The notes under the pieces: generated by a model
Database searches by the model: none
What the model saw: only the letters and a program-made list of their open reading frames with translations
What the model was told of the DNA's origin: nothing
Translations under genes and position numbers: made by a program
Shown here: positions 1,739 to 17,965 of the stretch, in pieces
How the letters are laid out: each line of letters opens with the position of its first letter
Position numbering within the stretch: position 1 is the stretch's first letter
Virus record (IMG/VR): IMGVR_UViG_3300028840_006257
Location: 62,001 to 126,000 of that record
Strand: one strand, 5' to 3'
DNA length: 64,000 nt

Positions 1739-4468
1739 GTGTCCATGACGTGCGTGAACAGCGGCAAGGAACCGTGGGCCAGCAAGGCTAATCCCCTGGA
1801 GCCGGCCTCGTGCGACGACGGTGACACGCCGCCCGACACGCCGCCGTGTCCCGATCCGTCGCCCAGTCCGGGTCCCTTCGGACCGGGCTGCGTGGGTTGG
1901 GAAGTTGGTCCCAACGAGTGCCCGGTTCCGCCGACCAACGTCCAGGTCGTGAGCCCGCTGTTCGCGGGAACCCTCGACGTCCGGTGGGATGATCCCGCGA
2001 TCCTGGCCAAGAACGGCAAGTTCAACGTGGTCGGGGTGAACGTCTACCGGAGCGACTCCTCCGAGCGAGGTCCCTACGCGCGCCTGAACAGGACGCCCGT
2101 CGGGGGCCTGTTCTACCGAGACTTCACGGACAACGTCCTGGTCGAGGACGAGGTGGTCGACTGGGACACGAGCTGGCTCTCGAGGGGGGAACAGTCGAAC
2201 GACCGCAAGTGGGTCTTCAGGACTAGCCGCTACCCCATCGTGAAGAAGTCGGGGCAGGCCATCGCGGCCGACAGCCCGATGGACGTGCGCCTCGTGATCG
2301 ACGGGCAGATCGTTCCGGTCCAGGCCGTGTTCGGACCGACGGGAGAGGTGACGCTCATCAACGTGCGGGGCTACAACTTCGCCACGGAGCGCTGGATCGA
2401 GCCGACCCTGCCGACGGGGCCCGAGACGGCGGTGTCGCTCAGCTACTGCTACAACGCCAACGCGATCCGCACGAGCCTGGACAGGAAGATCTGGTATCGG
2501 GTCACGACGGTCGCCGCCGATCCGAGCTCTCCGACGGGCTTCCGCGAGACGCCGCTCGACTTCGCCGAGCCCGCGACGCACAGGGCGGTCGAGTCCCTAG
2601 ACTACATGTGGCGAGAGGCGATCAGGCGCAACAACTGGGTGCTCGAGCAGGGCGGCGAGCGCGTCAAGATCTTCGTCAAGAAGACCTCGGGCGAGCAGTG
2701 CTTCTGCGGGCGCGACCCGCGGGCCATGGAATACGCGCAGCACCCGAGCGCGCGCTGCGAGACCTGCTTCCCGCTTGGCACCGAGGTCATGATGGGAGAC
2801 TTTACCCGCAAACCCATTGAGGAGGTGCAAGTCGGAGACGAAGTTCTGACCCACGCAGGTAAAGTCCGCCGCGTCTACGAGACGATGAGCCGTCCGGTTC
2901 GAGAGTGCCTCATCGACATCCAAGCGACCCACGGTGTGGGGTTCTCTCCGACCGGGAATCATCCGGTGCTCATTGTCAGACGTGAGGACGCGCGCTGCGT
3001 CAGGAACAAGAGGAGCTTGTGCACGGGGCCGGAGAGCAAAGTCATCTGCACCCGCAAGTCTTGGGCGGATCCTTGCCAACGAGACGTGCAGCAACATGCC
3101 CAGTGGGTGAGGGCTGACGAGGTCCGCGAAGGAGACTATCTCGTGTTCTGCCTGCCGAGCGACGAACTTTTCACGAACGGGATGAGTCGTGACCGGCTGC
3201 GTGTGCTCGGGTACTACGCGGCCGAAGGAAACACGGCCAAGAAGCAGCGCAAGGATGATGGGTCGACGACCCCGGACGACAAGACGACCGTCTTCGGATT
3301 CCACGTTGATGAGATTCCGTCGTTCGTGACCGAGCTTCAAGAATGTTTGCGGGATGAGTACGGGGCCTCCTCTTCTGTTCAGCCGTGCAGCAACACCGAG
3401 AACGGCTGCGCCTTGGTCGTGAGTCGTCAGGCCGTGGCTAAGGACATATTGGCTCACGTTGGGAAGTACAGTGTGGCCAAGCGACTCAGCCGAAATCTCG
3501 CGTGGCAGCGTCCAGAGATGGCGCGCGAGTTCCTGGGCGCCTATTTCAACGGGGATGGCTGGCAGTGTCTGAACGAGTCCAGGACGCACCTTGGAGTGAG
3601 TAGCGCTTCGTACGCCATGGCGCGGCAGGTGGAGGTCATGCTTCTCCGACAAGGAATAGTTCCGAGGTTCGACTCTCGGTATCGCACGGGGGTTGCGAAT
3701 CCGGGCCGTCCGGGCACGCACGAGACGACGGAGCACACGGTGGCTGTTCGCAAGACAGACATGCACGTGCTTGCCAGTACGATGCAGAAGATGACCGACG
3801 TGCCTTCGGAGAGGCGCCGAGGAGGATGGGCTGTCAGTGCAGGTCGTCTCGTTCTCTATCCCGTCCGCAGCGTTCGTCACATCCCGTACGAGGGCTCCGT
3901 CTACAATCTTGAAGTCGAGGAGGACCATTCCTACGTGGCCAACGGGGCGGTTGCCCACAACTGTTTTGGAACGGGTTTTATCGGTGGGTTTGAAGGGCCC
4001 TACGACGCCATCGTCGCCCCCGACGACGCCGACCGTGCCGTGCGCCAGACGCCGAACGGGCGCTACCTCGAACACATGCAGGACGTGTGGACGGGCCCGA
4101 GCCCGATGCTCACGCAGAGAGACTTCATCGTCAAGCAGACGAACGAGCGCTACAGCATCGGTCCCGTGCGGAAGCCGAGCAACCGGGGCAACGTCCTCCA
4201 GCAGCACTTCCAGATCCGGTACCTCGACGAGCAGGACATCCGGTACAGGGTGCCCCTGTTCGACACCACCGAGCTGTGCTGGCCCGAGACCCGCGAGCGT
4301 CCGGCCGTCCTGCAGCGGGGCGCGTGGGAGACGGAGTATCCGCCCGAGGGTCCGCACCCCGTGGGCGCCGACTACCAGCAGACTCCGATGGAGACCGAGA
4401 AGGAGAACGTCCCTGACGAGCGCGAGCAGAGAGGCCGGACGCCGGTCTGGTCCAACATATCGTACTGA
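1739..4468 (+). CDS. Neck/head-closure-like virion protein with N-terminal FN3-like domain and Zn-finger, interrupted by an intein (spliced product ~510 aa)
   Basis: FN3-like PPTNVQV...LDVRWDDP...GVNVYRS. After splicing the extein reads CFC...RCETCFGTGFIGGF (CxxCxGxG) then WTGPSPMLTQRDFIV...ERYSI. Sits at the start of the tail gene block; the neck assignment is by context. Confidence 0.6.
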   Translation: MSMTCVNSGKEPWASKANPLEPASCDDGDTPPDTPPCPDPSPSPGPFGPGCVGWEVGPNECPVPPTNVQVVSPLFAGTLDVRWDDPAILAKNGKFNVVGVNVYRSDSSERGPYARLNRTPVGGLFYRDFTDNVLVEDEVVDWDTSWLSRGEQSNDRKWVFRTSRYPIVKKSGQAIAADSPMDVRLVIDGQIVPVQAVFGPTGEVTLINVRGYNFATERWIEPTLPTGPETAVSLSYCYNANAIRTSLDRKIWYRVTTVAADPSSPTGFRETPLDFAEPATHRAVESLDYMWREAIRRNNWVLEQGGERVKIFVKKTSGEQCFCGRDPRAMEYAQHPSARCETCFPLGTEVMMGDFTRKPIEEVQVGDEVLTHAGKVRRVYETMSRPVRECLIDIQATHGVGFSPTGNHPVLIVRREDARCVRNKRSLCTGPESKVICTRKSWADPCQRDVQQHAQWVRADEVREGDYLVFCLPSDELFTNGMSRDRLRVLGYYAAEGNTAKKQRKDDGSTTPDDKTTVFGFHVDEIPSFVTELQECLRDEYGASSSVQPCSNTENGCALVVSRQAVAKDILAHVGKYSVAKRLSRNLAWQRPEMAREFLGAYFNGDGWQCLNESRTHLGVSSASYAMARQVEVMLLRQGIVPRFDSRYRTGVANPGRPGTHETTEHTVAVRKTDMHVLASTMQKMTDVPSERRRGGWAVSAGRLVLYPVRSVRHIPYEGSVYNLEVEEDHSYVANGAVAHNCFGTGFIGGFEGPYDAIVAPDDADRAVRQTPNGRYLEHMQDVWTGPSPMLTQRDFIVKQTNERYSIGPVRKPSNRGNVLQQHFQIRYLDEQDIRYRVPLFDTTELCWPETRERPAVLQRGAWETEYPPEGPHPVGADYQQTPMETEKENVPDEREQRGRTPVWSNISY
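2765..3961 (+). mobile_element. Intein (399 aa) with LAGLIDADG homing endonuclease
   Basis: Block A CFPLGTEVMMGD at 2765; block B PTGNHPVL; LAGLIDADG helices LGYYAAEG (3206-3229) and FLGAYFNGDG (3530-3559); block F/G VYNLEVEEDHSYVANGAVAHN ending 3961, then +1 Cys (TGT). Codon usage is more AT-rich than the exteins. Confidence 0.95.
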
Positions 4469-5018: not shown

Positions 5019-5719
5019 TCGAGGCCCACATCATCTGCTGTCGGAAGTGCGAGATCCGAGACCTCGGGCTCACGATGCTGCCCGGTCAGGAGCAGTGGGT
5101 CTCGGAGGTCGTCGCGGGGAACTCCGAGGACCTCCGCGCGGAGCAGCGCAAGGGGAACGTCCGCGTCTACCGGAGGACGCGGCCCGTGAATAGGGAGCCG
5201 AAGCGTCCTCCCCCTCCGTTCGTCGTGCGCTCTCGACCCCAGGTTCGGGAGCGCGAGGAGCCTAGGGTCATCCAGAAGGTCATCGAGAAGGTCGTGGAGG
5301 TCGTCGAGACCAAGGTCGACACCGAGGAGGTCGCGCGCCAGGTGCGAGGAGCCCTGCTGGGGGACATGAGGGAGATAATCGCGGAGGAGATGAGCAGGCT
5401 GCTCGAGGCCCAGGCGACGCCCCAAAGGGCCCAGGCGACGCCCCCGACGGTCGACGCGGCCGCCCTGGAAAGCGCCCTGGAGGCGGTCTTGGGGCGCCTG
5501 GCGGGTGCTGTGGCGCTTCCGGTCGCTCGGACGGCTCCTCCGTCTCCCGACAGGCCCCTCTACCTGCCCGAGAACCTGGTCGACAAGGACGCCAAGGTCA
5601 GGATCAGGGTGAGCGAGCGTGCTCAGGACGAGGGCGCCGACCTCGACGACGCCGCCGACGCGCTCCGAAAGTTCAAGAAGCGCCACGCGGGTAAAACGAA
5701 GGAGAGCGAGGAGAGCTGA
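5015..5719 (+). CDS. Hypothetical protein
   Basis: ATGA overlap with the upstream stop; 234 aa, helical centre, low-complexity Pro/Ala stretches. Confidence 0.7.
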   Translation: MIEAHIICCRKCEIRDLGLTMLPGQEQWVSEVVAGNSEDLRAEQRKGNVRVYRRTRPVNREPKRPPPPFVVRSRPQVREREEPRVIQKVIEKVVEVVETKVDTEEVARQVRGALLGDMREIIAEEMSRLLEAQATPQRAQATPPTVDAAALESALEAVLGRLAGAVALPVARTAPPSPDRPLYLPENLVDKDAKVRIRVSERAQDEGADLDDAADALRKFKKRHAGKTKESEES

Positions 5720-5723
5720 GACG

Positions 5724-6731
5724 ATGACCGAACGTGAAACTCCGATCCACGGCGTCGGGCTAGATTGCGGGACCATGAACCTCGTCGCGGCCAGGCGGAG
5801 CAAGGAGGGCGTCGTGACGACCCGCATCAGGGACGCCTTCCTCGACCTCCCCCGGGAGCACAAGAAGATGCTCCGGCTCTCCAACGTGAACTACGTCGAG
5901 AAGGGGGAGGACCTGGTAATCGTCGGGGACGCCGCCTACGAGATGGCCAACGTCCTCGGAAAGGAGGTGAGGCGTCCGCTGCATTCCGGGGTCGTCTCTC
6001 CACAGGAGATGGAGGCCCTCGAGATCCTCGCCATCCTGATCCGACACGTCCTCAAGGAACCGGTCCAGGAGGATGAGATCTGCTACTTCTCCGTCCCTGC
6101 TCCTCCCGTGGATCAGCCGGGGAGGGACGTGATCTACCACCGCGGCATCCTGGAACGCATCATCACGGAGTGCGGCTACCAGGCTCACGCCTCGAGCGAG
6201 GCGCTGGCCATCATCTACTCCGAGTGCGCACAGGACCAGTTCAGCGGCATCGGCATCTCCTTCGGCAGCGGCCTGTCGAACGTCACGCTCGCCATCAACA
6301 CGGTCGAGGGGCTCAGCTTCTCGGTCGCCAGGGCGGGCGACTGGCTCGATCGCGGCGCGGCCAGCAGCACGGACCTCACGCGGGCTCGGATGTGCACTCT
6401 CAAGGAGAAGGGCCTCAACCTGATGCAACCCGGAGGACGCGAGGAGGAGGCGCTGTGCGTCTACTACAAGTCCCTCGTCGAGTACGTGCTCGACCACATC
6501 GCGAGCGAGTTCGACAAGATCAAGGGTCGCTTCGCGCTGCCCCACCCGATCCCCATCGTGGTCTCGGGAGGCACGAGCAAGGCCGGGGGTTTCCTCGAGT
6601 TCTTCACGCGGGTCTTCGAGGAGAAGCGCCGGAAGTTCCCCATCGAGGTCAGCGAGGTCCGGGCCGCGAAGGAGCCGCTCGACGCCGTCGCCAGGGGGCT
6701 GCTCGTCCAGGCCCTCCAGGAATATGAGTAG
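5724..6731 (+). CDS. Actin-fold (MreB/ParM/FtsA superfamily) ATPase
   Basis: ATG 5724; phosphate-1 GLDCGTMNL, connect-1 SEALAII, phosphate-2 GISFGSGLSNV, adenosine IVVSGGTS, connect-2 PLDAVARG; 335 aa. Confidence 0.85.
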   Translation: MTERETPIHGVGLDCGTMNLVAARRSKEGVVTTRIRDAFLDLPREHKKMLRLSNVNYVEKGEDLVIVGDAAYEMANVLGKEVRRPLHSGVVSPQEMEALEILAILIRHVLKEPVQEDEICYFSVPAPPVDQPGRDVIYHRGILERIITECGYQAHASSEALAIIYSECAQDQFSGIGISFGSGLSNVTLAINTVEGLSFSVARAGDWLDRGAASSTDLTRARMCTLKEKGLNLMQPGGREEEALCVYYKSLVEYVLDHIASEFDKIKGRFALPHPIPIVVSGGTSKAGGFLEFFTRVFEEKRRKFPIEVSEVRAAKEPLDAVARGLLVQALQEYE

Positions 6732-7809: not shown

Positions 7810-8289
7810 TTGATCAGGAGGCCCCGCGCTGTGACCCTCGAGGAACGCGTCCGCGCCGTCAAGGCGAAGTTTGAAGAAGCGGCCGACGAGCTGCTCGCAC
7901 TCGTCTCCGAGAGTCCGAGCCAGGTCTCGGACATCATGCGGATCGCGCGGCCGAGCACGGAGGACGGGCCCTCCTTCTCGGTCAGCAGCGAGCTCGTGGA
8001 GCGGCTGCAAGTGGAGGGCCACCCTCCCAGCGAGGACCGTCTCTCGCTTCCGTGGGAGGGTCGCTTTCTCCAGGTCTCGTCTCGCAGCGTCCGACACGAG
8101 AAGGAGCCCGTAGACGTCCTCATCCCGGAGGGAGAGGTCTTCGTCCTGGTCAACGTCTGGCCCGAGAACCCGGCGCGCACCCAGGCGTTTCGCGAGCTGA
8201 ACGCGGGAGCCGGGGGGCCCGAGGAGATTCAGCGGCGTCTGGCCGAGATCAGCGAGGCTGAAGAGGCTGGTCCATGTACTACTTCCTGA
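7810..8289 (+). CDS. Hypothetical protein
   Basis: 159-aa ORF filling the gap, TTG start, overlaps the next gene's start. Confidence 0.55.
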   Translation: MIRRPRAVTLEERVRAVKAKFEEAADELLALVSESPSQVSDIMRIARPSTEDGPSFSVSSELVERLQVEGHPPSEDRLSLPWEGRFLQVSSRSVRHEKEPVDVLIPEGEVFVLVNVWPENPARTQAFRELNAGAGGPEEIQRRLAEISEAEEAGPCTTS

Positions 8290-9533
8290 CGGGTCAGCTC
8301 CAGCGCAAGTTCATCCACGAGCTTCGGCGCTACTGGCGGTACCACCCCAAGTACTCGGACATCGTCGAGCACATTCAGGGGAAGTACTCGCACCGGGAGC
8401 GGCCGCAGTACGGCATCGTCCTGAAGAACAGTTCGGGCAACCAGGTTCAGCTGGCGGCGGACAACTTCCAGGGGTACGTCCACTCCTACGTCTACCTGGC
8501 GCACGTGGAGGGGAGACCGAACCTGTCCGTGGAGTGGGTGCGCGAGGACATGATCGCCATCCAGGACAACGGCGGCATGTTCCCGTCGCCTCCCGGCATC
8601 TACTACCTCGACTTCTGCGACGCGAACGGGAACCCCACGGACGAGACGTTCTACGTCGACCCGCTCCTCGACGTGATCGACGAGACCGTCCTCAAGATCA
8701 ACGACACCCAGTACCAGCTCGAGGAGGGCAAGTTCCTCGCCGGAACGCTCAGACTCTACCGGATGCCGGGCAACATCAGGCTCTACGACGGCACGAACTA
8801 CACGGCCGTCCCGGAGACGGGTGTCGTCACGCTGATCGACACCCTGACCGACGACGAGTTCCTCTCGGCCGACTACCGCTGTCCCGCCGAGAGCACGGGA
8901 CCATGGGTCGTGCGGGAGGAGTACGCCCTGCGCGAGCCCATCCCGGGCTGCGTCCTGGCCTTCGGACGCCGCGTCACTCCCGGCGACCGGCTCGCCGTGG
9001 TCGTCCAGCAGAGGCGCACCATCGCCGCCCTCGAGTACGGGGGGCGCTGGGACCTCTCGCTCGACGTGGACGTCATCGCCCGGGACCCGGACTCGCAACG
9101 TGAAATTCTCGATCAGACCTCCCTGTACCTCTGGTCTACGGCGCGGCCGAGGCTCTCGAGCCAGGGCATCGAGATCTCGGCCGTGACCATGGGAGGCGAG
9201 ACCGAGGAGACCTACGATGACGTGGCGGACGACTGGTTCTACAATGCCAGCTTCAGCATCCAGGTCCAGACCGACTGGATGATCCACGTTCCGCTCGGCA
9301 TCTGCATCCGGGCCATCGAGCCCGGCAGCGGGGAGGCCATCGTGCCCGGAACTGCTCCCCTCGTGGCCCCGTTCGTCGAGCAGATCGCGGGCCTAACGGA
9401 CGAGCAGATCGCCCAGATCCAGGCCAACTTCCGCAAGATGGCCGACCTCGGATTGCGGGCTCCATGGGATCCGTGGTTCGTGGGCAAGGAGGGCCACCCG
9501 GGCGTCTACGGCACGGGTCCGATGCTCCGTTAA
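8274..9533 (+). CDS. Tail terminator/tail-completion-like protein with an inserted beta domain
   Basis: 419 aa. C-terminal RWDLSLDVDVIARD...ILDQTSLYLW...FYNASFSIQVQTDW pattern fits a gpU/gp15-like alpha/beta fold; lies just upstream of the sheath gene. Confidence 0.5.
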   Translation: MYYFLTGQLQRKFIHELRRYWRYHPKYSDIVEHIQGKYSHRERPQYGIVLKNSSGNQVQLAADNFQGYVHSYVYLAHVEGRPNLSVEWVREDMIAIQDNGGMFPSPPGIYYLDFCDANGNPTDETFYVDPLLDVIDETVLKINDTQYQLEEGKFLAGTLRLYRMPGNIRLYDGTNYTAVPETGVVTLIDTLTDDEFLSADYRCPAESTGPWVVREEYALREPIPGCVLAFGRRVTPGDRLAVVVQQRRTIAALEYGGRWDLSLDVDVIARDPDSQREILDQTSLYLWSTARPRLSSQGIEISAVTMGGETEETYDDVADDWFYNASFSIQVQTDWMIHVPLGICIRAIEPGSGEAIVPGTAPLVAPFVEQIAGLTDEQIAQIQANFRKMADLGLRAPWDPWFVGKEGHPGVYGTGPMLR

Positions 9534-10516: not shown

Positions 10517-13500
10517 ATGGCAAATTTCCCTGGGACCATCTACGCGCCTCCTGGCGTCTACACCCGCACCAGGTTCCAGAGCCCCGTCTCTGGCGTCCTG
10601 GCGGGCGTTCGCATCCCCGTCTTCATCGGCACCGGCAACGAGCTGCTTCAGCAGCAGGACCTCGAGGTCATTCGTGGCTCTAGCAGCTCGGTCGATCAGC
10701 AGGTCCCGCAGGAGGACGAGACCGGTCGTGCCGTCGTGAGCATCTCCGATACGGGTCAGGTGACCCTCGGGGACTTCAACGGCGCGCGACAGCGCATCCA
10801 GGTCCGCAACTTCCCGATCACGAACGGAGACGGAAGCGGGACCACCGCCACGGACCCGAGTTCCATCCTCGTGACCATCAACGGCAGGCCCGACGTGGTC
10901 CTGAGCGTGGCTCGCGCCGACATCGGCGTCATCGAGATCAGCACGGCGCCCGACCTGAACGACGACGTGCGGGTGACGTACTTCTTCAAGCGGCACGACA
11001 CGCAGATGACGGACAACGTGTCGGACCAGGTGACTCCCGAGTCGGCCATCCTCGAGGGCGCCATCGGCAACCTCTTCGAGTTCACCTCGGACGACAACGT
11101 GTTCACCGTCACGGTGGACGACGACCAGAACCAGGTCGTGACGGCCACCTTCCCGACGGGGAGCGTCTCGGCCTCGACGGTCGTCTCGCTGATCAACGGC
11201 GCCGCGGCGGGAACGTCGCTCATCGCGTCGGAGTACACGAACAACTTCGGCCTCACGGCCGTTCGCCTCGTGGCGGACCGCAACCTCCTCATCGGGAGCG
11301 GTTCGGCCAACGTCGTCCTCGGCTTCACGCAGGGCCAGGCGACGAGCCGCAACAAGAACTTCGTGACGTTCAACGGTCCCATCGTGGACGGGACGAACGG
11401 GGGCATCACGACGACAGACACGTCCAAGGTCACGGTCCGCGTGAACGGGACCCAGGTCATCCCGACCGAGCTCGACGGACGCAACCGCACCGTGACGCTG
11501 CCCTTCGCGCCGGCCGCCGGCGATCTCGTCACGATTCAGTACTACTTCAACACGTGGCAGGACACCTTCGACTACCTGGCCAACATCAACGTGACGGAGG
11601 TCCTCCGCTGCGGGATCGTGCCGGGCAACAACGACTTCATCGAGCAGGCGGACTTCGTCCTGAAGGACGACCTGATCGTGTGGGGGAGCGCTTTCCTGGT
11701 GAGCGCCGGCGTGACGAGCGTCGGGGCCCCGGCCTTCGGGCCGACGCAGATCAGCGGCCTTCTGGTCGACAACCGCTGGTTCCTGTCCGAGACGACCGTC
11801 GTCGTGGACGACACGGTCTCCCCGCCAGTCGAGAACCGTCGGCAGTTCCAGCTCCCGGCCCAACCCACGACGGGCAACGGCCGCGACACACCGCTCGGCC
11901 AGAACGTCTTCCTGTCCATCTCCAACCGGCGGGTGGACCTGCCGACCAACAACCCGAACCTCGTCAAGGCCTACTGGGGTTGGAGCGTGCAGGACGCCCT
12001 CCAGCGCGGTCCCGTGACTGTGACCGAGGTCAAGGGGTCGATCATCACCCTCGAGGAGTCCGTTCCCGTCGGAGCGGGCGTCTGGGCGACCTTCTGGTAC
12101 AACATCCTCGTCGACGAGGAGTACACGGTCCAGGTCGAGACCTCGGGACCGTCCGGCATCGGCACCTACTTCCTCTTCGACGGCGACGGAAACCCCGTCT
12201 ACACGCCGACCTTCGGGAGCAAGGGCCCCGCCATGACCGGGGTGACGATTTCGTTCCCCTCGGGCTCCGAGCTCACCCCCGACGTGCACTTCGAGGGCGG
12301 CACGAGTGGTCCCGTCGAGGAGACGGTGACGGTCCAGTTCGCGGACAAGGACGCCACCATCGCGAAGTTCACGGTCGGCGGCAGCGGTCCCTACGCGTTC
12401 GTCTCGGGCGAGTCCGACAGGGCCCGGTTCATGATCGACAGCAGCGCCCTCGCGGGCGGCACGGCCGGGATCGACCTGTCCGCGCCGCACGGCATCCAGG
12501 GACTCGGTTTCAGCGCGAGCCTCCTCGGAGAGGAGATCCAGTACGACGAGGATACCGGCACCACGACCTACGACGTCCTCGCGGGCATCAACGACGACGT
12601 GTCGATGTCCGTGGACGGCGTGGTCATCTCGGTGACGGTCCCGGCCCAGACCGGCGTGAACGCGGACGCCTACGTCGAGGCCATCAACGCCGAGGCGAAG
12701 CTGTCCGCGAACTCTCCGTACCTCGACGGCACCACCCGGTTCCTCGGGACCACGGTCGTGACCGCGGGCGAGTACGACAAGCTCGTGTTCAACTACACGG
12801 GCGTCACCAACCCCGCGACGGGCCCGGTGACCGCCGTCATCGCCCCGGGAACGTACGCCTCCCCGGCCTTCATGGCCGCGGCGGTGGACACGGCCCTGAA
12901 CACGGCCATCGCGGCCCTGCCGGCGGGGTATGCGGGCCTCGACATCGCCGTGACTGCGAACGCCGACGGACAGATGCGGTTCACCTACAAGGCGGCCGAC
13001 ACCGACCTGGGCACCTCCGCGAGCGGGACCGTCACCGAGGTGGGAGCCATCGTGGGAGACACGATCACCATCGACACGGTGACCTTGACCGGGGCTCTGA
13101 CGCAGGTTTCGGGCGGTCTCGACTTCGACACCGGGCAGGCTCGGGCGACTCTCGTGCCGACCGGCGTGGAACCCGGCGACAACTTCACGATCAACGCGGG
13201 GGGTGGCCCGATCACCATCACCGCGTTGGGCGCCCAGACCCCGGGTGGCCTGAACTTCGATGAGGGGGACCAGGCGACGGGCACTATCACCGTCTCGGGA
13301 CCAATTCCGAACGACACCGTCACGATCAACGGGATCACGCTGACGGCGCTCGGAGCTCAGACCCCGGGTGGCCTGAACTTCGACGAGGGCACGCGAGCCA
13401 CCGGCACCGCCACGCTCACCGGGGTCCAGTACGGCGACACGATCTCCATCGACACCACCGCGGTCGGGGGAGGTCCCGTCACTCTGACGGCTAGCAACAC

Positions 13501-16500
13501 GCTGACCCCGGGCGGCCTTGACTTCAACGTCGGCACGGCGGCGACGGGAAGCATTCAGCTCGTGGGCGTGCGGCCCGCGACCATCGCGCCGTTCCCGGTG
13601 ACCGCGGCCGACACCGTCACCATCGGCGGGAACGTCCTGACGGCGAACGAGGGGCCGCGCACGCCGGGCGCCGACGACTTCGACGCCGGGACCAGGGCGC
13701 TCGGGAGCGTCACGGTCGTCGTGGACGCGCTCCCGGCGACGGGCGTCCTGTACGGCGACACGATCACCGTCGGGGGCATCGCCCTCGTCGCGGACAACGT
13801 CACGACTCCGGGTGGCCTGAACTTCGACGCGGGCACCCAGGCGTTCGAGGTGCTGACCGTGCTCCTGGCTCCGGGCGTCCCGACGCCTCCCGCGGTCATC
13901 ACTATCGACGTGGGCGGCGCGGCGGGCGGACCGTTCCCGCTCATCCCGGCGGGCGGTCCGCGCACCCCGGGCGCGAACGACTACGACGAGACGCTCGGGA
14001 CCACGATGGCGATAGCGGCCGACATCGCGGCGGCGATCAACGATCCGCTCAACGTGTTCTCCGCGTTCATGAGCGCGGCCGTCGGGCCCGGTCCTTCGGA
14101 CGTGACGTTCACGTGGAACGTGCCCGGCGTGGTCGCCAACGGCATCGTGAACCTGACGGCCGATCCGATGCTCTCTCCGCTCGTCGGCTTCGCCGGCGGC
14201 GTTGGCACGGAGGTCACGACCGCGACGGCCCTCGTCACGGCGCTCAGCGATCCGCTGAACGGGCTCACGGGCCTCATCCAGGCGCACAACACCGGCGGCG
14301 TTTCCAACGTCGTGAACCTGCAGGCCCTCACCCCGGGCCTCGCGGGCAACTCGATCAGCCTCGTCTCCACGGCGCCGGCGCGGCTCGTGCCGTCGGCGGC
14401 GACCATGGCGGGCGGCGTAGGCGACGACCTCACGGCCGCAACCGACGTGCAGGCGGCGGTGAACGACGTCGCCAACTCGTTCGCCACGGCGGTGACGGCC
14501 CTCACGACCGGAGACACGGCGGCCCTCACGGCGGTCACGCCCGGAGCCGTGGGCAACCTCATCACGCTGACCACGACGGCGGCCGGGAGGTTCGTGCTGT
14601 CCGCCGGGACGCTCACGGGAGGGGTCGGCGACGACATCTCGGCGGCGACGAGCCTGGTCGCGGCAATCTCCGACGCGGGCAACGGACTCGTCGGCGGCGT
14701 CGTCGCGGACAACGCCTCGGGCACGACCAACGTCGTCACCATCGACTCGTACACGCCGGGACTGGTCGGTAACGGCGTCCTCCTGGCGGAGTCCACGGCC
14801 GGAGCTCGGATCGCGCTCTCGGGCGCCACGCTGCTCGGCGGCGTCGGCGACAACACGACGGTCGCGGCCTCCATCGCGGCGGCCATCAACGACGTCGGAA
14901 ACGGCATCGTGACCTCCGTGACGGCCCTCGCGGCCCTGGCCGTCGTCACGATGACGGCGGTGACGCCGGGCAACGCCGGAAATTTGATCGGTACCACGTC
15001 GTCAGACGCGACGCGCCTGCTCATGTCGGGCCTGACCCTCGCCGGGGGCTCGGGAACCGACCTCAGCGTCGCCACGAGCATCGTCGCGGCGATCAACGAC
15101 CCGGGCAACGGGCTCGCCGTGGACGTGATGGCCGACAACGCCAGCGGAACCTCGACCACGGTCACCGTGTGGGACCTGACTCCGGGCGTGCTCGGCAACA
15201 CGAACACCATCGCCTCGTCCACGGGCACGCGGCTCCCGGTCTCGGGCGCCAACTTCACGGGCGGCGACACGGTGGTGGGCGTGGGTTCGAACATCGTCAC
15301 CGCGATCAACGACGCGGCCAACGGCCTGAACGGAATCGTGACGGCCGACAACAGCGGGGGCACCTCGGCGGTCGTGGATGTCACGGCGGCCGTGCCGGGC
15401 CCGCAGGGGAACTTCATCGTGCTCGCCTCGAGCGACGCGGGGCGCCTCCCGGTCTCCGGCGCGACCCTCACGGGAGGTGCCGGCCTCGGCGGCGGCGTGT
15501 TCGAGTTCCTCGACGCGGCGACGGTCGCGGAGGACTTCGCGATTCTCGCGGGCCTCTCCACGGACGCGCTGCCCAGCCAGGAGCAGACCAAGGTCGTCGA
15601 CGGAGATCTCGTGCGCCGGTTCACGGCGTCGGGCAGCTCCGGGCGCCTGATCTACGACCGGCTCGTCGTCCGCAACCGCGTCGTGCCCGGCAGCGGGTCG
15701 CTCGCGGCCGAGTCTCAGGTCGACCAGACCCAGCTCGTCATCGAGGGCACGAACGCCGAGGACGAGACGGGCCTCCAGCCGAGGGCATTCGGATCGGCGG
15801 GGATCGAGGCGACGATCCGGTCCGCCTCCTTGTACGGGGAGGTGGGCTTCAAGGACGGTCAGGTGGCGTCGGGGACGTACGGGGACTCGCGCGACGGACA
15901 GCCCGCGGTGATGTTCTACGCCCAGGGTGGCATCAATCCCCAGAACAACGTGTTCAAGTTCAACATCGACGGGACGCCCGTGACGGTGGTGTTCACGGAC
16001 GGCGTCGGGGCCGCGATTCCCGCGGCCGGGAGCGCCAGCGTGCCTCTCGGTCCGGTCACGACGGCGAACACGGTCCTCGCCCAGATCCTCGCCGGGGCGG
16101 TCGGCGCCGGACTGCCAGCCTCGGTCGTGCTCCAGGAGGGCGCGGGCACCCGACTGCTGAGCGCCACCGCCACCACGGACTCCGCCGTCACGATAGGTGC
16201 CGGGAACGCGAACGACGTCCTCGGCTTCTCCGACGACGCCACGGCGGCCCGGACCCTGGTCGAGCCCGAGGTCACGGCCTCCGCGCTCATGATGCACCAC
16301 AGCGCGTCCCTCAACGACGCGCTCCTGGACTACCAGAACCCCGACGCGACGTACTTCGCAGAGCAGGCCCTCGCGGGCGTCGAGACCGACTCGAGCAACG
16401 CGCAGTTCCTCTTCATCGAGTCGCAGGCCAACAACATCGTGGGCCTCGGGGCCTCGTCCAACATTACGTTCCTCACCGCCACGAGTGACTCGTGGCTGCG

Positions 16501-17965
16501 CACGGGGACGGGAGTCGGCGTGGCGACGGGCGAGGGGGCCGCGGGCGAGAGCGGATTCCAGGGCTACTACGTCACGAGCTCGGACCCGGTCGACGGCTCG
16601 GGTTCCGCCAACACGTCGTCCCTCAACAACGGCACGGGCCAGGACGGCATCATCGGCACGACGTACCGCGACGCGGTGACGGGCCTCACCTTCACCGTCC
16701 TCGAGCGCGAGGGGGGCTCCGCCTACCCGACGGGCGCGGGGGCCTGGTTCACCTTCGAGGTGCGCAAGCTCGTCACCACGGACGCGAACATCCCGGTCAA
16801 CTCCATCCCGGGCCTCGAGATGACGGTCGCGAATACCGAGGGATCCACGATCCCGCAGGGAGACACGGCCATCGTCGAGACGTTCGACCGGGGCGGCCAG
16901 GAACCCGCGGTGGGGGACTCCTACTTCGTGACCTACAACTTCTCGAAGACGGAGGCCGACTTCGAGACGATGCTGTTCACGAATCAGCGGGCCGTGGAGG
17001 CGAACTACGGGGAGGTCAACCCGGACAACCCGGTGTCCCTCGCCGCCTACCTCGGCTTCCTGAACGGCGGGGTCGTCCTCGCCATCAAGCAGGTGCCGAA
17101 GATCCCGGGTTCGAACCAGGCGAGCACCCAGAGCTACCTCGACGCGCTCGACGACCTCAGGGGACCGCTGCCGGGAGGCGCCACGCTGGACACGATCACG
17201 CCGCTCAAGGGCGACGACGAGGACCTGTTCCTCTCCCTGTCGAACCACTGCGACATCCAGTCGAGCATCCGGTACCGCTCCGAGCGGACCGGGCTGATCG
17301 GGGTCTCGTCGGGGACGCAGCCGACGGACGTCGGCGGCATCGCGCAGCAGATCGCGAACACGCGCATCAGGCTCGTGTACCCGGACATCGTGACCCTCAC
17401 GATCCAGGACGCCCTCGGGAACGACAAGCAGTTCCTCGTGGACGGGACCTTCCTCGCGGCGGCGCTCTCGGGCAACCGAGCCGCCCCGAGGATCGACGTG
17501 GCGACCCCGTGGACGAGGGCCCGCATCGTCGGCTTCGACGAGCTCGCCCGTACCCTCGACGCGGTCGAGCAGAACCAGGTGGCCGTACAGGGCGTCACCG
17601 TCCTGGACCAGCGCGGCACGATCATCCGAGTCCGTCAGGGCCTCACGACGGACATGAGCAACATCCTCACCAAGCTCCCGACGGTCATCACCATCGCGGA
17701 CGAGGTGCAGCGCTCCGCTCGCAGGGATCTCGACAGGTTCATCGGGGTCAAGTTCCTGCCGGGCATCCTCTCGGAGATCGAGGGCCAGCTCGCGACCACC
17801 ATGAAGGCGCTCAAGAACGCCGAGATCATCGCGGCGTTCACGGGCATCCAGGCGCGGACCACCAACGACCCGACGCTGGTGGAGATCGAAGCATTTTATC
17901 AGCCGATTTTCCCGCTTTTATACATCGTTATAACCTTCAACCTTCGCAGCAACCTTGGAGGTTGA
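10517..17965 (+). CDS. Contractile tail sheath protein, greatly enlarged (2482 aa)
   Basis: N-terminal APPGVYTRT; C-terminal sheath core (VLAIKQVP...RTGLIG...RIRLVYP...VRQGLTTD...IADEVQRSARRDLDRFIG...EIEAFYQPIFPLLYIVITFNL). Tube gene lies downstream. Confidence 0.92.
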   Translation: MANFPGTIYAPPGVYTRTRFQSPVSGVLAGVRIPVFIGTGNELLQQQDLEVIRGSSSSVDQQVPQEDETGRAVVSISDTGQVTLGDFNGARQRIQVRNFPITNGDGSGTTATDPSSILVTINGRPDVVLSVARADIGVIEISTAPDLNDDVRVTYFFKRHDTQMTDNVSDQVTPESAILEGAIGNLFEFTSDDNVFTVTVDDDQNQVVTATFPTGSVSASTVVSLINGAAAGTSLIASEYTNNFGLTAVRLVADRNLLIGSGSANVVLGFTQGQATSRNKNFVTFNGPIVDGTNGGITTTDTSKVTVRVNGTQVIPTELDGRNRTVTLPFAPAAGDLVTIQYYFNTWQDTFDYLANINVTEVLRCGIVPGNNDFIEQADFVLKDDLIVWGSAFLVSAGVTSVGAPAFGPTQISGLLVDNRWFLSETTVVVDDTVSPPVENRRQFQLPAQPTTGNGRDTPLGQNVFLSISNRRVDLPTNNPNLVKAYWGWSVQDALQRGPVTVTEVKGSIITLEESVPVGAGVWATFWYNILVDEEYTVQVETSGPSGIGTYFLFDGDGNPVYTPTFGSKGPAMTGVTISFPSGSELTPDVHFEGGTSGPVEETVTVQFADKDATIAKFTVGGSGPYAFVSGESDRARFMIDSSALAGGTAGIDLSAPHGIQGLGFSASLLGEEIQYDEDTGTTTYDVLAGINDDVSMSVDGVVISVTVPAQTGVNADAYVEAINAEAKLSANSPYLDGTTRFLGTTVVTAGEYDKLVFNYTGVTNPATGPVTAVIAPGTYASPAFMAAAVDTALNTAIAALPAGYAGLDIAVTANADGQMRFTYKAADTDLGTSASGTVTEVGAIVGDTITIDTVTLTGALTQVSGGLDFDTGQARATLVPTGVEPGDNFTINAGGGPITITALGAQTPGGLNFDEGDQATGTITVSGPIPNDTVTINGITLTALGAQTPGGLNFDEGTRATGTATLTGVQYGDTISIDTTAVGGGPVTLTASNTLTPGGLDFNVGTAATGSIQLVGVRPATIAPFPVTAADTVTIGGNVLTANEGPRTPGADDFDAGTRALGSVTVVVDALPATGVLYGDTITVGGIALVADNVTTPGGLNFDAGTQAFEVLTVLLAPGVPTPPAVITIDVGGAAGGPFPLIPAGGPRTPGANDYDETLGTTMAIAADIAAAINDPLNVFSAFMSAAVGPGPSDVTFTWNVPGVVANGIVNLTADPMLSPLVGFAGGVGTEVTTATALVTALSDPLNGLTGLIQAHNTGGVSNVVNLQALTPGLAGNSISLVSTAPARLVPSAATMAGGVGDDLTAATDVQAAVNDVANSFATAVTALTTGDTAALTAVTPGAVGNLITLTTTAAGRFVLSAGTLTGGVGDDISAATSLVAAISDAGNGLVGGVVADNASGTTNVVTIDSYTPGLVGNGVLLAESTAGARIALSGATLLGGVGDNTTVAASIAAAINDVGNGIVTSVTALAALAVVTMTAVTPGNAGNLIGTTSSDATRLLMSGLTLAGGSGTDLSVATSIVAAINDPGNGLAVDVMADNASGTSTTVTVWDLTPGVLGNTNTIASSTGTRLPVSGANFTGGDTVVGVGSNIVTAINDAANGLNGIVTADNSGGTSAVVDVTAAVPGPQGNFIVLASSDAGRLPVSGATLTGGAGLGGGVFEFLDAATVAEDFAILAGLSTDALPSQEQTKVVDGDLVRRFTASGSSGRLIYDRLVVRNRVVPGSGSLAAESQVDQTQLVIEGTNAEDETGLQPRAFGSAGIEATIRSASLYGEVGFKDGQVASGTYGDSRDGQPAVMFYAQGGINPQNNVFKFNIDGTPVTVVFTDGVGAAIPAAGSASVPLGPVTTANTVLAQILAGAVGAGLPASVVLQEGAGTRLLSATATTDSAVTIGAGNANDVLGFSDDATAARTLVEPEVTASALMMHHSASLNDALLDYQNPDATYFAEQALAGVETDSSNAQFLFIESQANNIVGLGASSNITFLTATSDSWLRTGTGVGVATGEGAAGESGFQGYYVTSSDPVDGSGSANTSSLNNGTGQDGIIGTTYRDAVTGLTFTVLEREGGSAYPTGAGAWFTFEVRKLVTTDANIPVNSIPGLEMTVANTEGSTIPQGDTAIVETFDRGGQEPAVGDSYFVTYNFSKTEADFETMLFTNQRAVEANYGEVNPDNPVSLAAYLGFLNGGVVLAIKQVPKIPGSNQASTQSYLDALDDLRGPLPGGATLDTITPLKGDDEDLFLSLSNHCDIQSSIRYRSERTGLIGVSSGTQPTDVGGIAQQIANTRIRLVYPDIVTLTIQDALGNDKQFLVDGTFLAAALSGNRAAPRIDVATPWTRARIVGFDELARTLDAVEQNQVAVQGVTVLDQRGTIIRVRQGLTTDMSNILTKLPTVITIADEVQRSARRDLDRFIGVKFLPGILSEIEGQLATTMKALKNAEIIAAFTGIQARTTNDPTLVEIEAFYQPIFPLLYIVITFNLRSNLGG
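13016..15483 (+). repeat. Seven N-half repeats (ending TPGGLNFDxG-like) followed by seven C-half repeats (AAIND...TPG..GN...TLxGG) within the sheath
   Basis: N-half loop motifs near 13105, 13238, 13361, 13505, 13661, 13805 and 13964. C-halves contain AINDPLN, ALSDPLN, AVNDVAN, AISDAGN, AINDVGN, AINDPGN and AINDAAN. Confidence 0.9.

What the first reader, a model, noticed from the sequence alone, without database searches (positions are those of the whole stretch)
2765..3999. Homing intein in a virion neck-like protein, inserted at a Zn-finger cysteine, with a one-sided co-conversion tract
Seen: the intein splits CET|CFGTG, so the CxxCxGxG ligand Cys is the +1 nucleophile and the Zn site forms only after splicing. 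The ~12 extein codons after the intein (TGT TTT GGA ACG GGT TTT ATC GGT GGG TTT GAA) keep donor-like AT-rich usage, while the upstream flank does not. The intein also has a four-Cys insert (CVRNKRSLC...VIC...DPC) before the endonuclease. Known: most inteins sit in nucleic-acid enzymes, and phage ones often in terminase or portal genes. Inference: recent homing into a structural gene, and virion assembly could become sensitive to metal or redox control of splicing.
Basis: partly seen in the sequence, partly recalled or inferred. Interest (0 to 1): 0.6.

Follow-up and report, generated by a model that had tools for sequence, protein, structure and literature searches.

The report
Homing intein in phage neck stopper
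A self-splicing, mobile protein insert (an intein) sits exactly at a zinc-binding cysteine of the neck "stopper" protein of a very large phage, at a site that two intein lineages have invaded repeatedly in related phages; it is an ordinary intein in an unusual structural host protein.

Summary
Window 2765-3961 is a complete 399-aa class-1 intein with a two-motif LAGLIDADG endonuclease. It is in frame in a 909-aa ORF (1739-4468) of a 213-kb fragment of a huge phage.

The host protein is best read as the neck stopper (head-closure) protein. Its C-terminal beta-barrel matches Staphylococcus phage 812 stopper gp97 (Z 10.2). It shares gp97's tetra-cysteine loop, which binds zinc in the gp97 crystal. 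The gene lies upstream of tail-terminator and sheath homologues. The +1 Cys is the fourth ligand.

The site is a recurrent hot spot: about 30 other alleles carry an intein there, from two lineages. Each intein-bearing allele near the window has an intein-free sister, and the intein tree disagrees with the extein tree. So the homing is real, but "recent" is not shown.

The 11-codon AT-ending tract (3962-3994) is a real anomaly (P about 8e-6). It recurs in a second high-GC intein-bearing allele and is absent from 22 high-GC intein-free alleles. Co-conversion is the simplest reading. However, the tract is more AT-rich than the intein itself.

Control of splicing by zinc or redox state is untested speculation.

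The parts
1739..2764 (+). N-extein (342 aa) of the stopper-like neck protein. It holds an N-terminal low-confidence region, an FN3-like outer domain with an inserted subdomain, the start of the beta-barrel core and three of the four loop cysteines. The database protein P0123 starts at ATG 1745.
   Evidence: ORF list. FN3-like matches Z about 11 for residues 53-281 of the homologue model, and stopper match from residue 285. More than 300 intein-free homologues.
2699..2707 (+). Cys321-Phe-Cys323, the first two cysteines of the tetra-cysteine loop (CxC).
   Evidence: Sequence. C319 invariant and C321 at least 90% conserved in alignment A1. Aligned to Cys66-Pro-Cys68 of phage 812 gp97.
2756..2758 (+). 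Cys340, extein position -3: the third loop cysteine. It forms a CxxC with the intein's Cys1 in the precursor and with the +1 Cys after splicing.
   Evidence: Sequence. Invariant in A1. Present in every intein-bearing allele.
2765..3961 (+). Class-1 intein, 399 aa, with a LAGLIDADG homing endonuclease domain. GC 0.60 and GC3 0.73, against 0.67 and 0.91 in the exteins.
   Evidence: Pfam. AF2 model pLDDT 88, pTM 0.87. Foldseek matches to TliVMA, PI-SceI and PI-PfuI inteins at E 1e-18 to 1e-15. Composition.
2765..2767 (+). Cys1, the N-terminal splicing nucleophile (block A, CFPLGTEV).
   Evidence: Invariant in 30 aligned inteins.
2951..2962 (+). Block B, Thr63-Gly-Asn-His66 (the TxxH motif).
   Evidence: T63 and H66 are invariant in alignment A2.
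2996..3076 (+). Four-Cys insert (Cys78, Cys86, Cys95, Cys104) in the Hint domain after block B. It is probably a small metal-binding knuckle, at the place where PI-SceI carries its DNA-recognition region.
   Evidence: Conserved in about 12 of the 18 other type-A inteins (P0128 departs at the fourth Cys) and absent in the P0130-P0135 subclade. Kept in the endonuclease-less mini-intein of L036. AF2 pLDDT below 50 for residues 83-100.
3197..3229 (+). LAGLIDADG motif 1 (LRVLGYYAAEG), with Glu154.
   Evidence: G149, A153 and G155 are invariant and E154 is nearly invariant.
3530..3562 (+). LAGLIDADG motif 2 (FLGAYFNGDGW), with Asp264.
   Evidence: G263, D264 and G265 are invariant. Pfam LAGLIDADG_3 covers intein residues 252-307.
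3956..3961 (+). His398-Asn399, the block G C-terminal splice residues.
   Evidence: N399 is invariant and H398 nearly invariant.
3962..3964 (+). The +1 Cys: the splicing nucleophile and the fourth cysteine of the tetra-cysteine loop.
   Evidence: Aligned to Cys83 of gp97.
3962..3994 (+). Eleven-codon tract with A/T-ending codons (TGT TTT GGA ACG GGT TTT ATC GGT GGG TTT GAA), the putative co-conversion footprint.
3962..4468 (+). C-extein (168 aa plus stop): the rest of the stopper beta-barrel and a disordered tail.
8274..9533 (+). Context: a homologue of the protein annotated as tail terminator in Tunturi_5.
   Evidence: tblastn with gp324, E 1e-8.
10517..17965 (+). Context: a giant tail sheath homologue (2482 aa).
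   Evidence: tblastn with the Tunturi_5 sheath, E 3e-53 and 3e-46.

Best explanation
Window 2765-3961 is a complete, probably active, class-1 homing intein (Hint splicing domain plus a two-motif LAGLIDADG endonuclease). It is inserted in frame in the gene for the neck stopper (head-closure) protein of a huge phage.

The insertion lies inside the stopper's tetra-cysteine loop (CxC-x16-CxxC-x-G-x-G), directly before the fourth cysteine. That cysteine is therefore both the +1 splicing nucleophile and a metal ligand of the mature protein.

Splicing would give a roughly 510-aa stopper with the junction CETC-FGTG, the sequence that intein-free homologues have. In phage 812 the tetra-cysteine loop is the rigid element that the tail terminator pushes on. 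A 399-aa intein in that loop should therefore block neck assembly, so splicing must come before head-tail joining (inferred).

The site is a long-standing intein hot spot in this protein family. It is used by two intein lineages that move horizontally and are gained or lost between close relatives.

The 33-nt tract of A/T-ending codons just downstream is linked to the intein. It is most simply donor flank copied in with the intein during double-strand-break repair (co-conversion), possibly the endonuclease's preferred half-site carried along through repeated homing.

Shown here: intein anatomy and boundaries, the fold and motif match, gene order, distribution, tree conflict and tract statistics. 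Inferred: splicing and endonuclease activity, Zn binding in this protein, the block to assembly, and the co-conversion mechanism.
For: Intein:
- Pfam finds Hint, LAGLIDADG and Intein_splicing domains.
- All catalytic residues are conserved across 30 inteins.
- The AF2 model has pLDDT 88 and matches PI-SceI, TliVMA and PI-PfuI at E down to 1e-18.
- Intein-free homologues are colinear at exactly this junction.

Stopper:
- The model of intein-free homologue P0003, residues 285-440, matches the phage 812 neck chain 8q01_S at Z 10.2 (136 residues, rmsd 3.6).
- It also matches neck chains of Pam3, FCWL1 and T1 at Z 8.0-8.5.
- PMC12886913 describes gp97 as a beta-barrel plus a Zn-binding tetra-cysteine loop.
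- hhalign puts CFC...CxxCFGTG on gp97's CPC...CPRCHGKG.
- Terminator and sheath homologues lie downstream. In Tunturi_5 the homologue sits between the connector and the terminator/sheath genes.

Hot spot and mobility:
- 30 other intein-bearing proteins all have the intein at C-x-x|C, with two intein types.
- In the N-extein tree the window is sister to intein-free P0007 (100/99). P0124 groups with intein-free P0009 and P0004. Type-B P0126 groups with intein-free P0006.
- The inteins of P0123, P0124 and P0125 form a 100/100 clade, although the extein of P0125 is distant.
- L036 carries a degenerate mini-intein.

Tract:
- P = 7.9e-6.
- An independent high-GC allele, L032, has tract GC3 0.36 against 0.87-0.91 in its exteins, and 1.00 on the N side.
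- 22 intein-free alleles with background GC3 of 0.76 or more never fall below 0.55.
- There is no promoter, terminator or unusual RNA fold there.
Against: - No Pfam or PHROG family places the exteins. gp97's own family, phrog_1004, does not hit.
- Foldseek E-values against PDB are all above 0.001, and the hhalign probability is only 8.7%. The stopper call therefore rests on structure, motif and gene order together.
- The adaptor homologue lies 17 kb upstream, not next to this gene.
- The tract is more AT3-rich than the intein (P = 5e-4). Some mid-GC intein-free relatives (L008, L009) carry partly similar codons.
- Type-B intein alleles show no such tract.
- No donor allele was found.
- Nothing here measures splicing, cleavage or metal binding.
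Confidence: 0.8

Rival explanations
1. The downstream tract is not a co-conversion footprint. It is ordinary local codon heterogeneity of a Gly/Phe-rich motif, or simply chance.
For: Intein-free alleles also run a little lower in this tract than in the rest of the gene. Among those with background GC3 of 0.76 or more, tract GC3 ranges from 0.55 to 1.00, and L008 has 0.55 against 0.80. The tract is only 11 codons long. Only two independent high-GC intein-bearing alleles could be examined.
Against: P = 7.9e-6 under amino-acid-specific codon usage, and only 8 of 14,037 windows elsewhere reach this level. TTT is used three times, although it makes up 5% of Phe codons. The same one-sided drop is seen in L032. 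No high-GC intein-free allele falls below 0.55.
Confidence: 0.1
2. The tract is kept by selection rather than by history. It could be a cluster of rare codons that slows the ribosome just after the intein to help folding or splicing. It could also be a nucleotide string maintained because it is the endonuclease's preferred half-site.
For: The tract is more AT3-rich than the intein itself (P = 5e-4), which simple same-age import does not predict. Type-A alleles from very different GC backgrounds share TGT TTT GGN ACN GGT TTT.
Against: While these codons are read, the last 30-40 intein residues are still inside the ribosome, so a pause there is badly placed to help folding. A disrupted target is under no selection in an allele that already holds the intein. 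There is no RNA structure signal.
Confidence: 0.15
3. The extein is some other neck or tail component, not the stopper: a tail terminator, a tail completion protein, or the 'minor tail protein' that Tunturi_5 annotates.
For: The Tunturi_5 homologue is annotated as a minor tail protein. The beta-barrel fold is shared by stoppers, terminators and tube proteins, and PBSX XkdH also matches at Z 8.2. No family-level sequence hit was found.
Against: The best structural match is the 812 stopper, which has the same tetra-cysteine loop in the same place. A separate homologue of the annotated terminator lies downstream. The gene order stopper, small ORF, terminator, small ORF, sheath is the same as in phage 812 and Tunturi_5.
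Confidence: 0.12
4. Splicing is conditional. Zinc or oxidation acting on the junction cysteines (Cys-3, Cys1, Cys+1) would hold the precursor, making neck completion sensitive to metal or redox state.
For: The precursor has a native C-x-x-C across the N-terminal junction, the geometry of the engineered 'redox trap' and of the native Cys-3/Cys1 disulfide of the Pab MoaA intein. Cys1-Cys+1 disulfides and Zn inhibition of splicing are documented for other inteins (PMC3922620; PMC7360933). Cys1 is invariant in all 30 inteins at this site.
Against: No data bear on this here. Cys-3 and Cys+1 are already explained by the Zn site of the mature protein. The phage cytoplasm is reducing. Most inteins splice constitutively.
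Confidence: 0.15
5. The intein is a dead remnant and the gene is non-functional.
For: None specific. Mini-inteins and degenerate forms do exist at this site (L036).
Against: All splicing and endonuclease residues are intact and the 909-codon frame is open. The same sequence with no differences is found in contigs from three runs. The gene is a conserved virion component.
Confidence: 0.03

Closest known systems
PI-SceI / TliVMA / PI-PfuI type inteins (class-1 inteins with a LAGLIDADG homing endonuclease)
   Same: The domain order is the same: Hint-N, an insert after block B, a two-motif LAGLIDADG domain, then Hint-C. The catalytic residues are the same: Cys1, TxxH, HN and +1 Cys. The structural match is E 1e-18. 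The four-Cys insert lies where PI-SceI has its DNA-recognition region (from my own knowledge of PI-SceI).
   Different: Sequence identity is only 12-16%. The insert is a short four-cysteine element that AF2 cannot place. The host protein is a virion structural protein, not an ATPase or polymerase.
Staphylococcus phage 812 stopper protein gp97 (PDB 8Q01, 8QKH; PMC12886913)
   Same: Beta-barrel core (Z 10.2). A tetra-cysteine loop CxC-Xn-CxxC-x-G-x-G at the same place in the fold. The gene lies ahead of the tail terminator and sheath genes.
   Different: No detectable family-level sequence similarity; phrog_1004 does not hit. The extra domain here is an N-terminal FN3-like module rather than gp97's external beta-sandwich. 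gp97 has no intein. The paper states that the motif is confined to Herelleviridae, which these data contradict.
Phage inteins catalogued in mycobacteriophages (Kelley et al. 2016, PMC5050341) and in phiCbK TerL/RNR (PMC3556154)
   Same: Inteins sit at conserved, functionally critical residues of phage proteins. Their distribution is patchy and consistent with homing. Several inteins occur per genome.
   Different: Those exteins are terminases, portal, helicases, methylases, nucleases and similar. A stopper or head-closure protein is not among them. Four of the six full-text searches I ran bore on inteins in phages or in neck proteins, and none found an intein described in a stopper or neck protein.
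Redox-trap and Zn-inhibited inteins (Ssp DnaE CPGC trap, Pab MoaA Cys-3/Cys1, Pab PolII Cys1/Cys+1, mycobacterial DnaB)
   Same: A native C-x-x-C spans the N-terminal junction, and there is a +1 Cys.
   Different: Here the cysteines are explained by the extein's own metal site. No regulation has been shown.

Membership tests
Class-1 intein (Hint superfamily) | N-terminal Cys or Ser nucleophile and the block B TxxH motif | tested here: met
   Cys1 (2765-2767) and Thr63...His66 (2951-2962) are invariant in 30 aligned inteins.
Class-1 intein (Hint superfamily) | C-terminal His-Asn followed by a +1 Cys, Ser or Thr | tested here: met
   AHN|C at 3953-3964. N399 is invariant.
Class-1 intein (Hint superfamily) | Hint fold | tested here: met
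   Pfam Hom_end_hint and Intein_splicing score above their cut-offs. The AF2 model has pLDDT 88 and matches solved inteins at E 1e-18.
Class-1 intein (Hint superfamily) | Precise in-frame insertion relative to intein-free homologues | tested here: met
   More than 60 intein-free alleles read CxxC[FY]G[TV]G across the junction.
Class-1 intein (Hint superfamily) | Protein splicing activity | not testable with these tools
   Needs expression plus a western blot or mass spectrometry.
LAGLIDADG homing endonuclease (two-motif, monomeric) | Two LAGLIDADG motifs, each with a catalytic acidic residue | tested here: met
   LGYYAAEG (Glu154) and YFNGDG (Asp264). The G/A/G and GDG positions are invariant. 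Pfam LAGLIDADG_3 E 6e-10. The I-DmoI-like fold matches at E 7e-7.
LAGLIDADG homing endonuclease (two-motif, monomeric) | Site-specific cleavage of the intein-free allele | not testable with these tools
   Indirect evidence only: patchy distribution and conflict between intein and extein trees.
Phage neck stopper / head-closure protein (812 gp97, SPP1 gp16 type) | Beta-barrel core fold | tested here: met
   Z 10.2 to 8q01_S, and Z 8.0-8.5 to neck chains of Pam3, FCWL1 and T1. Foldseek probability 0.97-1.00 but E above 0.001.
Phage neck stopper / head-closure protein (812 gp97, SPP1 gp16 type) | Tetra-cysteine loop CxC-Xn-CxxC (gp97 subgroup) | tested here: met
   Three Cys (C319, C338, C341) are invariant and C321 is at least 90% conserved. 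They align on gp97 Cys66, 68, 80 and 83. Zn binding in this protein was not tested.
Phage neck stopper / head-closure protein (812 gp97, SPP1 gp16 type) | Gene lies between the adaptor and tail terminator genes | tested here: inconclusive
   Terminator and sheath homologues are downstream. The adaptor homologue is 17 kb upstream, with other genes in between.
Phage neck stopper / head-closure protein (812 gp97, SPP1 gp16 type) | Sequence-family membership (phrog_1004 or a Pfam stopper family) | tested here: not met
   No hit for the exteins or for P0003. gp97 itself hits phrog_1004 at 1e-114. So I file this as stopper-like by fold and motif, not as a member of that sequence family.
Phage neck stopper / head-closure protein (812 gp97, SPP1 gp16 type) | Hexameric ring in the virion between adaptor and terminator | not testable with these tools
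   Needs cryo-EM or virion proteomics.
Homing co-conversion tract | Flank composition departs from the host gene and from intein-free alleles in a similar background | tested here: met
Homing co-conversion tract | Flank matches the donor's flank or the intein's composition | tested here: inconclusive
   No donor was found. Codons are shared with other type-A alleles, but the tract is more AT3-rich than the intein (P = 5e-4).

The most novel reading that the evidence does not exclude
The stopper intein acts as an assembly checkpoint. In the precursor, the intein's Cys1 stands in for the +1 Cys, completing a surrogate tetra-cysteine site or forming a Cys-3/Cys1 disulfide. Zinc or oxidation would then hold the stopper unspliced and delay head closure and tail joining until conditions allow. 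The same phage's adaptor gene is also interrupted by an intein, so neck assembly as a whole would be gated by protein splicing.
Probability: 0.1. Interest if true: 0.75.

Novelty: new member of a known kind. Interest (0 to 1): 0.45.

Why it matters
- It extends the list of intein host proteins from nucleic-acid enzymes, terminases and portals to a non-enzymatic virion neck protein. The insertion is at a metal-ligand cysteine rather than an ATPase or polymerase motif.
- It gives a natural, well-populated test bed. About 30 intein-bearing alleles of two lineages and hundreds of intein-free alleles span GC3 from 0.14 to 0.92. These can be used to study homing, co-conversion and intein loss in uncultured huge phages.
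- It shows that the Zn-binding tetra-cysteine loop of the stopper, reported as specific to Herelleviridae, also occurs in huge-phage stoppers, Bacillus phage G gp175 and Tunturi_5 gp322.
- For annotation, it assigns a function to a large family of "hypothetical" or "minor tail" proteins of huge phages.

Tried and rejected
- Pfam and PHROGs on the two exteins, searched separately, and on homologues gave nothing usable.
- A profile of 60 homologues against PDB sequences gave only a weak FN3-like match.
- Foldseek against PDB gave no E below 0.001. The neck matches came through only with VIA-align Z-scores.
- DNA could not be fetched for the most informative alleles: intein-free sister P0007, P0003, intein-bearing P0124, and P0129. 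The direct sister-allele test of the tract was therefore not possible.
- Reads: the three runs are held as contigs only, so rare intein-free variants of the same strain cannot be seen. All full-length pieces are identical to the window.
- A promoter/terminator scan and an RNA fold of the tract found no signal (z = 0.65). A regulatory or structural RNA reading of the tract is rejected.
- AF2 could not place the four-Cys insert (pLDDT about 44), so whether the four Cys cluster remains open.
- The insert in type-B inteins looked to me like an AP2 DNA-binding domain, but Pfam did not confirm it. It remains a lead only.
The exteins were searched by reference one at a time, the natural intein-free homologue P0003 stood in for the mature protein, and the extein tree used the N-extein alone.
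- The large representative-protein search was not used, because the word search and the structure search settled the question.


Full report
**Setting**

The window is bases 62,001-126,000 of a single 213,010-bp virus record. CheckV rates the record about 40% complete. All long ORFs lie on the + strand, and GC is about 65% with GC3 about 0.9.

The region encodes a structural module:
- a volactin-like actin (5619-6731, Pfam E 1e-74) and a PAPS reductase;
- baseplate J and V domains further down;
- homologues of the tail terminator (8274-9533) and tail sheath (10517-17965, 2482 aa) of Tunturiibacter phage Tunturi_5.

Relatives are huge phages with contigs up to about 650 kb.

**The observation**

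The 909-aa ORF 1739-4468 reads ...CFCGRDPRAMEYAQHPSARCET | CFPLGTEV...GAVAHN | CFGTGFIGGFEG....

- The middle 399 residues (2765-3961) carry Hom_end_hint, LAGLIDADG_3 and Intein_splicing.
- An AlphaFold model built on 30 related inteins has pLDDT 88 and pTM 0.87.
- That model matches the solved TliVMA, PI-SceI and PI-PfuI inteins at E 1e-18 to 1e-15. Its endonuclease part matches I-DmoI.
- Cys1, Thr63, His66, Asn399 and the G-A-G and G-D-G positions of the two LAGLIDADG motifs are invariant in the alignment. Glu154, Asp387 and His398 are at least 90% conserved. The +1 Cys is present in every intein-bearing allele examined.
- Intein-free homologues run straight through the junction as C-x-x-C-[FY]-G-[TV]-G.

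**What the host protein is**

Neither extein hits Pfam or PHROGs. I searched them one at a time and used a natural intein-free homologue, P0003, as a stand-in for the mature protein. P0003 is 508 aa and 81% identical over the exteins.

Its model (pLDDT 74.5) has two main parts:
- an FN3-like module with an inserted subdomain (residues 53-281, Z about 11);
- a C-terminal beta-barrel (residues 285-440).

The beta-barrel matches the phage 812 neck chain 8q01_S at Z 10.2 (136 residues, rmsd 3.6). It also matches neck chains of Pam3, FCWL1 and T1 at Z 8.0-8.5.

[quoted passage not shown] The loop has the pattern Cys-Pro-Cys-Xn-Cys-X-X-Cys and holds a zinc atom in the 2.2 A crystal structure. The tail terminator pushes on this loop when the tail docks.

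I read gp97 from the phage record...FCPCLNPDTGHPRVDCPRCHGKGIAY... A profile comparison puts the family's C-F-C...C-x-x-C-F-G-T-G on it in register (E 0.0038 pairwise).

Of the four cysteines in 60 intein-free homologues, three (C319, C338, C341) are invariant and C321 is at least 90% conserved. They are also present in Bacillus phage G gp175 and Tunturi_5 gp322. BFVD gives gp175 as the top structural match (E 1.5e-14).

Gene order agrees:
- phage 812: adaptor, stopper, small ORF, terminator, small ORF, sheath;
- Tunturi_5: connector ... gp322, gp323, terminator, gp325, sheath;
- here: this gene, a small ORF, a few inserted genes, terminator homologue, small ORF, sheath.

"Virion neck-like" is therefore right, and the protein is best called stopper-like. 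The call rests on fold, motif and gene order together. It is not a member of gp97's sequence family; phrog_1004 does not hit.

**Where the intein sits**

It lies between the third and fourth cysteines of the loop, directly before the fourth. The fourth cysteine is the +1 nucleophile.

That does not follow from the sequence. The intein's own Cys1 occupies the same position (C-E-T-C-F in both precursor and product). Intein termini lie close together in the fold. So a surrogate four-Cys site, or a Cys-3/Cys1 disulfide, is possible in the precursor.

That geometry is the one used in the engineered "redox trap" and seen in the Pab MoaA intein. Zn inhibition and Cys1/Cys+1 disulfides are known in other inteins (PMC3922620; PMC7360933). 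None of this is tested here.

One thing can be inferred with more weight. A 399-aa domain in the loop that contacts the tail terminator should prevent proper neck assembly, so splicing should come before head-tail joining.

**How common, and how mobile**

- A search with the whole precursor found 30 other intein-bearing homologues. Every one has the intein at the same C-x-x|C point.
- They fall into two intein types. Type A (CFPPGTE...VAHN) includes the window's intein. Type B (CFVPGTLVRTE...THN) is about 30% identical to type A and has a different insert.
- DNA pattern scans also found inteins at the same motif in more distant branches of the extein family, in genomes with GC as low as 0.30.
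- Intein-free alleles outnumber intein-bearing ones roughly ten to one.

In a tree of the N-extein alone, each intein-bearing allele near the window has an intein-free sister:
- the window is sister to intein-free P0007 (support 100/99; 91% extein identity);
- type-A P0124 groups with intein-free P0009 and P0004;
- type-B P0126 is sister to intein-free P0006;
- type-A P0135 sits inside a type-B pair.

In the intein tree, P0123, P0124 and P0125 form a 100/100 clade, although the extein of P0125 belongs to a distant branch (intein 68.5% identical, extein 52%).

L036 carries a 232-aa type-A mini-intein that has lost the LAGLIDADG domain.

This is the expected picture of a homing cycle: invasion, spread, decay and loss. 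It does not show that the window's copy is recent. Its nearest relative is only 77% identical and no donor was found.

The intein's lower GC (0.60 against 0.67; GC3 0.73 against 0.91) fits incomplete adaptation to this genome. Inteins in L032, L118 and L030 lag behind their hosts in the same direction.

**The downstream tract**

Codons 3962-3994 have 8 of 11 A/T-ending codons, including TTT three times. TTT makes up 5% of Phe codons in this window.

- Under amino-acid-specific codon usage, P = 7.9e-6. Only 8 of 14,037 eleven-codon windows in the other genes reach this level.
- The 12 codons before the intein are host-like (GC3 0.92).
- I collected 60 distinct intein-free alleles and 12 intein-bearing ones with DNA.
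- Among 22 intein-free alleles with background GC3 of 0.76 or more, the tract GC3 is 0.55-1.00.
- The only other high-GC type-A allele, L032 (Ga0129333_10006254), repeats the pattern: 0.36 in the tract, 0.87-0.91 in its exteins and 1.00 on the N side.
- Type-A alleles from many GC backgrounds share TGT TTT GGN ACN GGT TTT. Phe at +10 is seen in 5 of the 19 type-A alleles (window, P0124, P0130, P0133, P0135), while this position is Tyr in at least 90% of intein-free alleles.
- There is no promoter, terminator or unusual RNA fold there.

Co-conversion of donor flank is the simplest account. A cut or resection biased to the C-extein side would make it one-sided.

Three things do not fit neatly:
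- the tract is more AT3-rich than the intein itself (P = 5e-4 under the intein's codon usage);
- mid-GC intein-free relatives L008 and L009 carry partly similar codons (0.55 and 0.45, against 0.80 and 0.69);
- type-B alleles show no tract.

A half-site carried along and renewed by repeated homing, or selection on these codons, cannot be excluded.

**The four-Cys insert**

Cys78, Cys86, Cys95 and Cys104 (2996-3076) follow block B.
- They are conserved in about 12 of the 18 other type-A inteins (P0128 departs at the fourth Cys).
- They are missing in one subclade, where the whole segment is deleted.
- They are kept in the endonuclease-less mini-intein.
- AlphaFold gives the segment pLDDT about 44.

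Its position corresponds to the DNA-recognition region of PI-SceI (from my own knowledge). A small metal-binding, DNA-contacting knuckle is a reasonable guess, but it is untested.

**Population**

The same sequence, with no differences, is in contigs of three runs from three studies; two of them may be the source of this record. It is also in IMG/VR and JGI contigs of 78.5 and 151 kb. One run also holds a more abundant related phage with an intein-free allele, so partners for homing coexist with this phage. Contigs cannot show rare variants.

**Verdict**

This is a textbook intein in an unusual host: a structural neck protein, at a metal-ligand cysteine, at a site that has been invaded repeatedly. 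I found no description of an intein in a stopper or neck protein. That is based on six full-text searches, four of which bore on phage or neck-protein inteins, and on the mycobacteriophage catalogue (PMC5050341). The finding is a new member of a known kind and of moderate interest. The co-conversion reading is plausible but not proven. Metal or redox control is speculation.

Noticed in passing
Outside the window, same genome: G000:C1:44696-47041 (loci L119/L124): The head-tail connector (adaptor) homologue also looks interrupted by an intein, in a 'fractured gene' layout. The ORF ends in an intein N-part (...DEF|SVDGETLVRV...). A free-standing DUF559/Vsr-like endonuclease ORF follows, and then an ORF with the intein C-part and extein (...IVAHN|SYSIGG...). 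Both neck genes of this phage would then carry inteins.
   Followed up: partly
Outside the window, same genome: G000:C1:154191-158369 and 172634-176920: There are more inteins in this genome: two in an SNF2-like helicase (at GLGK|C and DEC|F) and one in a family-A DNA polymerase (PIQG|C...VVHN|T). That makes at least five intein signals in 213 kb.
   Followed up: partly
window 2699-2758 and 3962-3964; L001 7206-8477; L002 7470-8321; L042 12197-13075: The stopper tetra-cysteine loop (CxC-Xn-CxxC-x-G-x-G) is shared by huge-phage homologues, Bacillus phage G gp175, Tunturi_5 gp322 and phage 812 gp97. PMC12886913 states that it is not found outside Herelleviridae.
   Followed up: partly
Proteins P0126, P0143-P0183; loci L019, L038, L041: A second, unrelated intein lineage (type B, about 30% identical to type A) occupies exactly the same site. 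It has a different insert (CGPKC plus LPSGRWWARVQ...GRKALGTY.T.EEA) that looked AP2-like to me, but Pfam did not confirm this.
   Followed up: partly
L036 1833-2528: A 232-aa type-A mini-intein at the same site has lost the LAGLIDADG domain but keeps the four-Cys insert. This suggests the insert belongs to the splicing domain rather than to the endonuclease domain.
   Followed up: partly
L008/L014 and L009/L010 (intein-free alleles), the junction codons: These intein-free relatives have a partly A/T-ending tract (GC3 0.55 and 0.45, against backgrounds of 0.80 and 0.69), with codons like the window's (GGA ACN GGN TTT NTN GGT GGG TAT). They could be alleles that lost an intein, or preferred targets of the endonuclease. 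This is unexplained.
   Followed up: no
window 5619-6731 and 6724-7779: A volactin-family actin homologue (Pfam E 1e-74) and a PAPS reductase lie between the stopper and tail terminator genes. The same neighbours are seen in related contigs.
   Followed up: no
window 2186-2356: The subdomain inserted in the stopper's FN3-like module resembles a segment of the Tunturi_5 tail sheath (tblastn E 1.5e-4). It may be a shared decoration domain.
   Followed up: no
window 10517-17965 and 39056-50077: The virion genes are very large: a 2482-aa sheath homologue whose N and C ends match a 1204-aa sheath, which implies a large insertion, and a 3673-aa ORF of unknown function.
   Followed up: no
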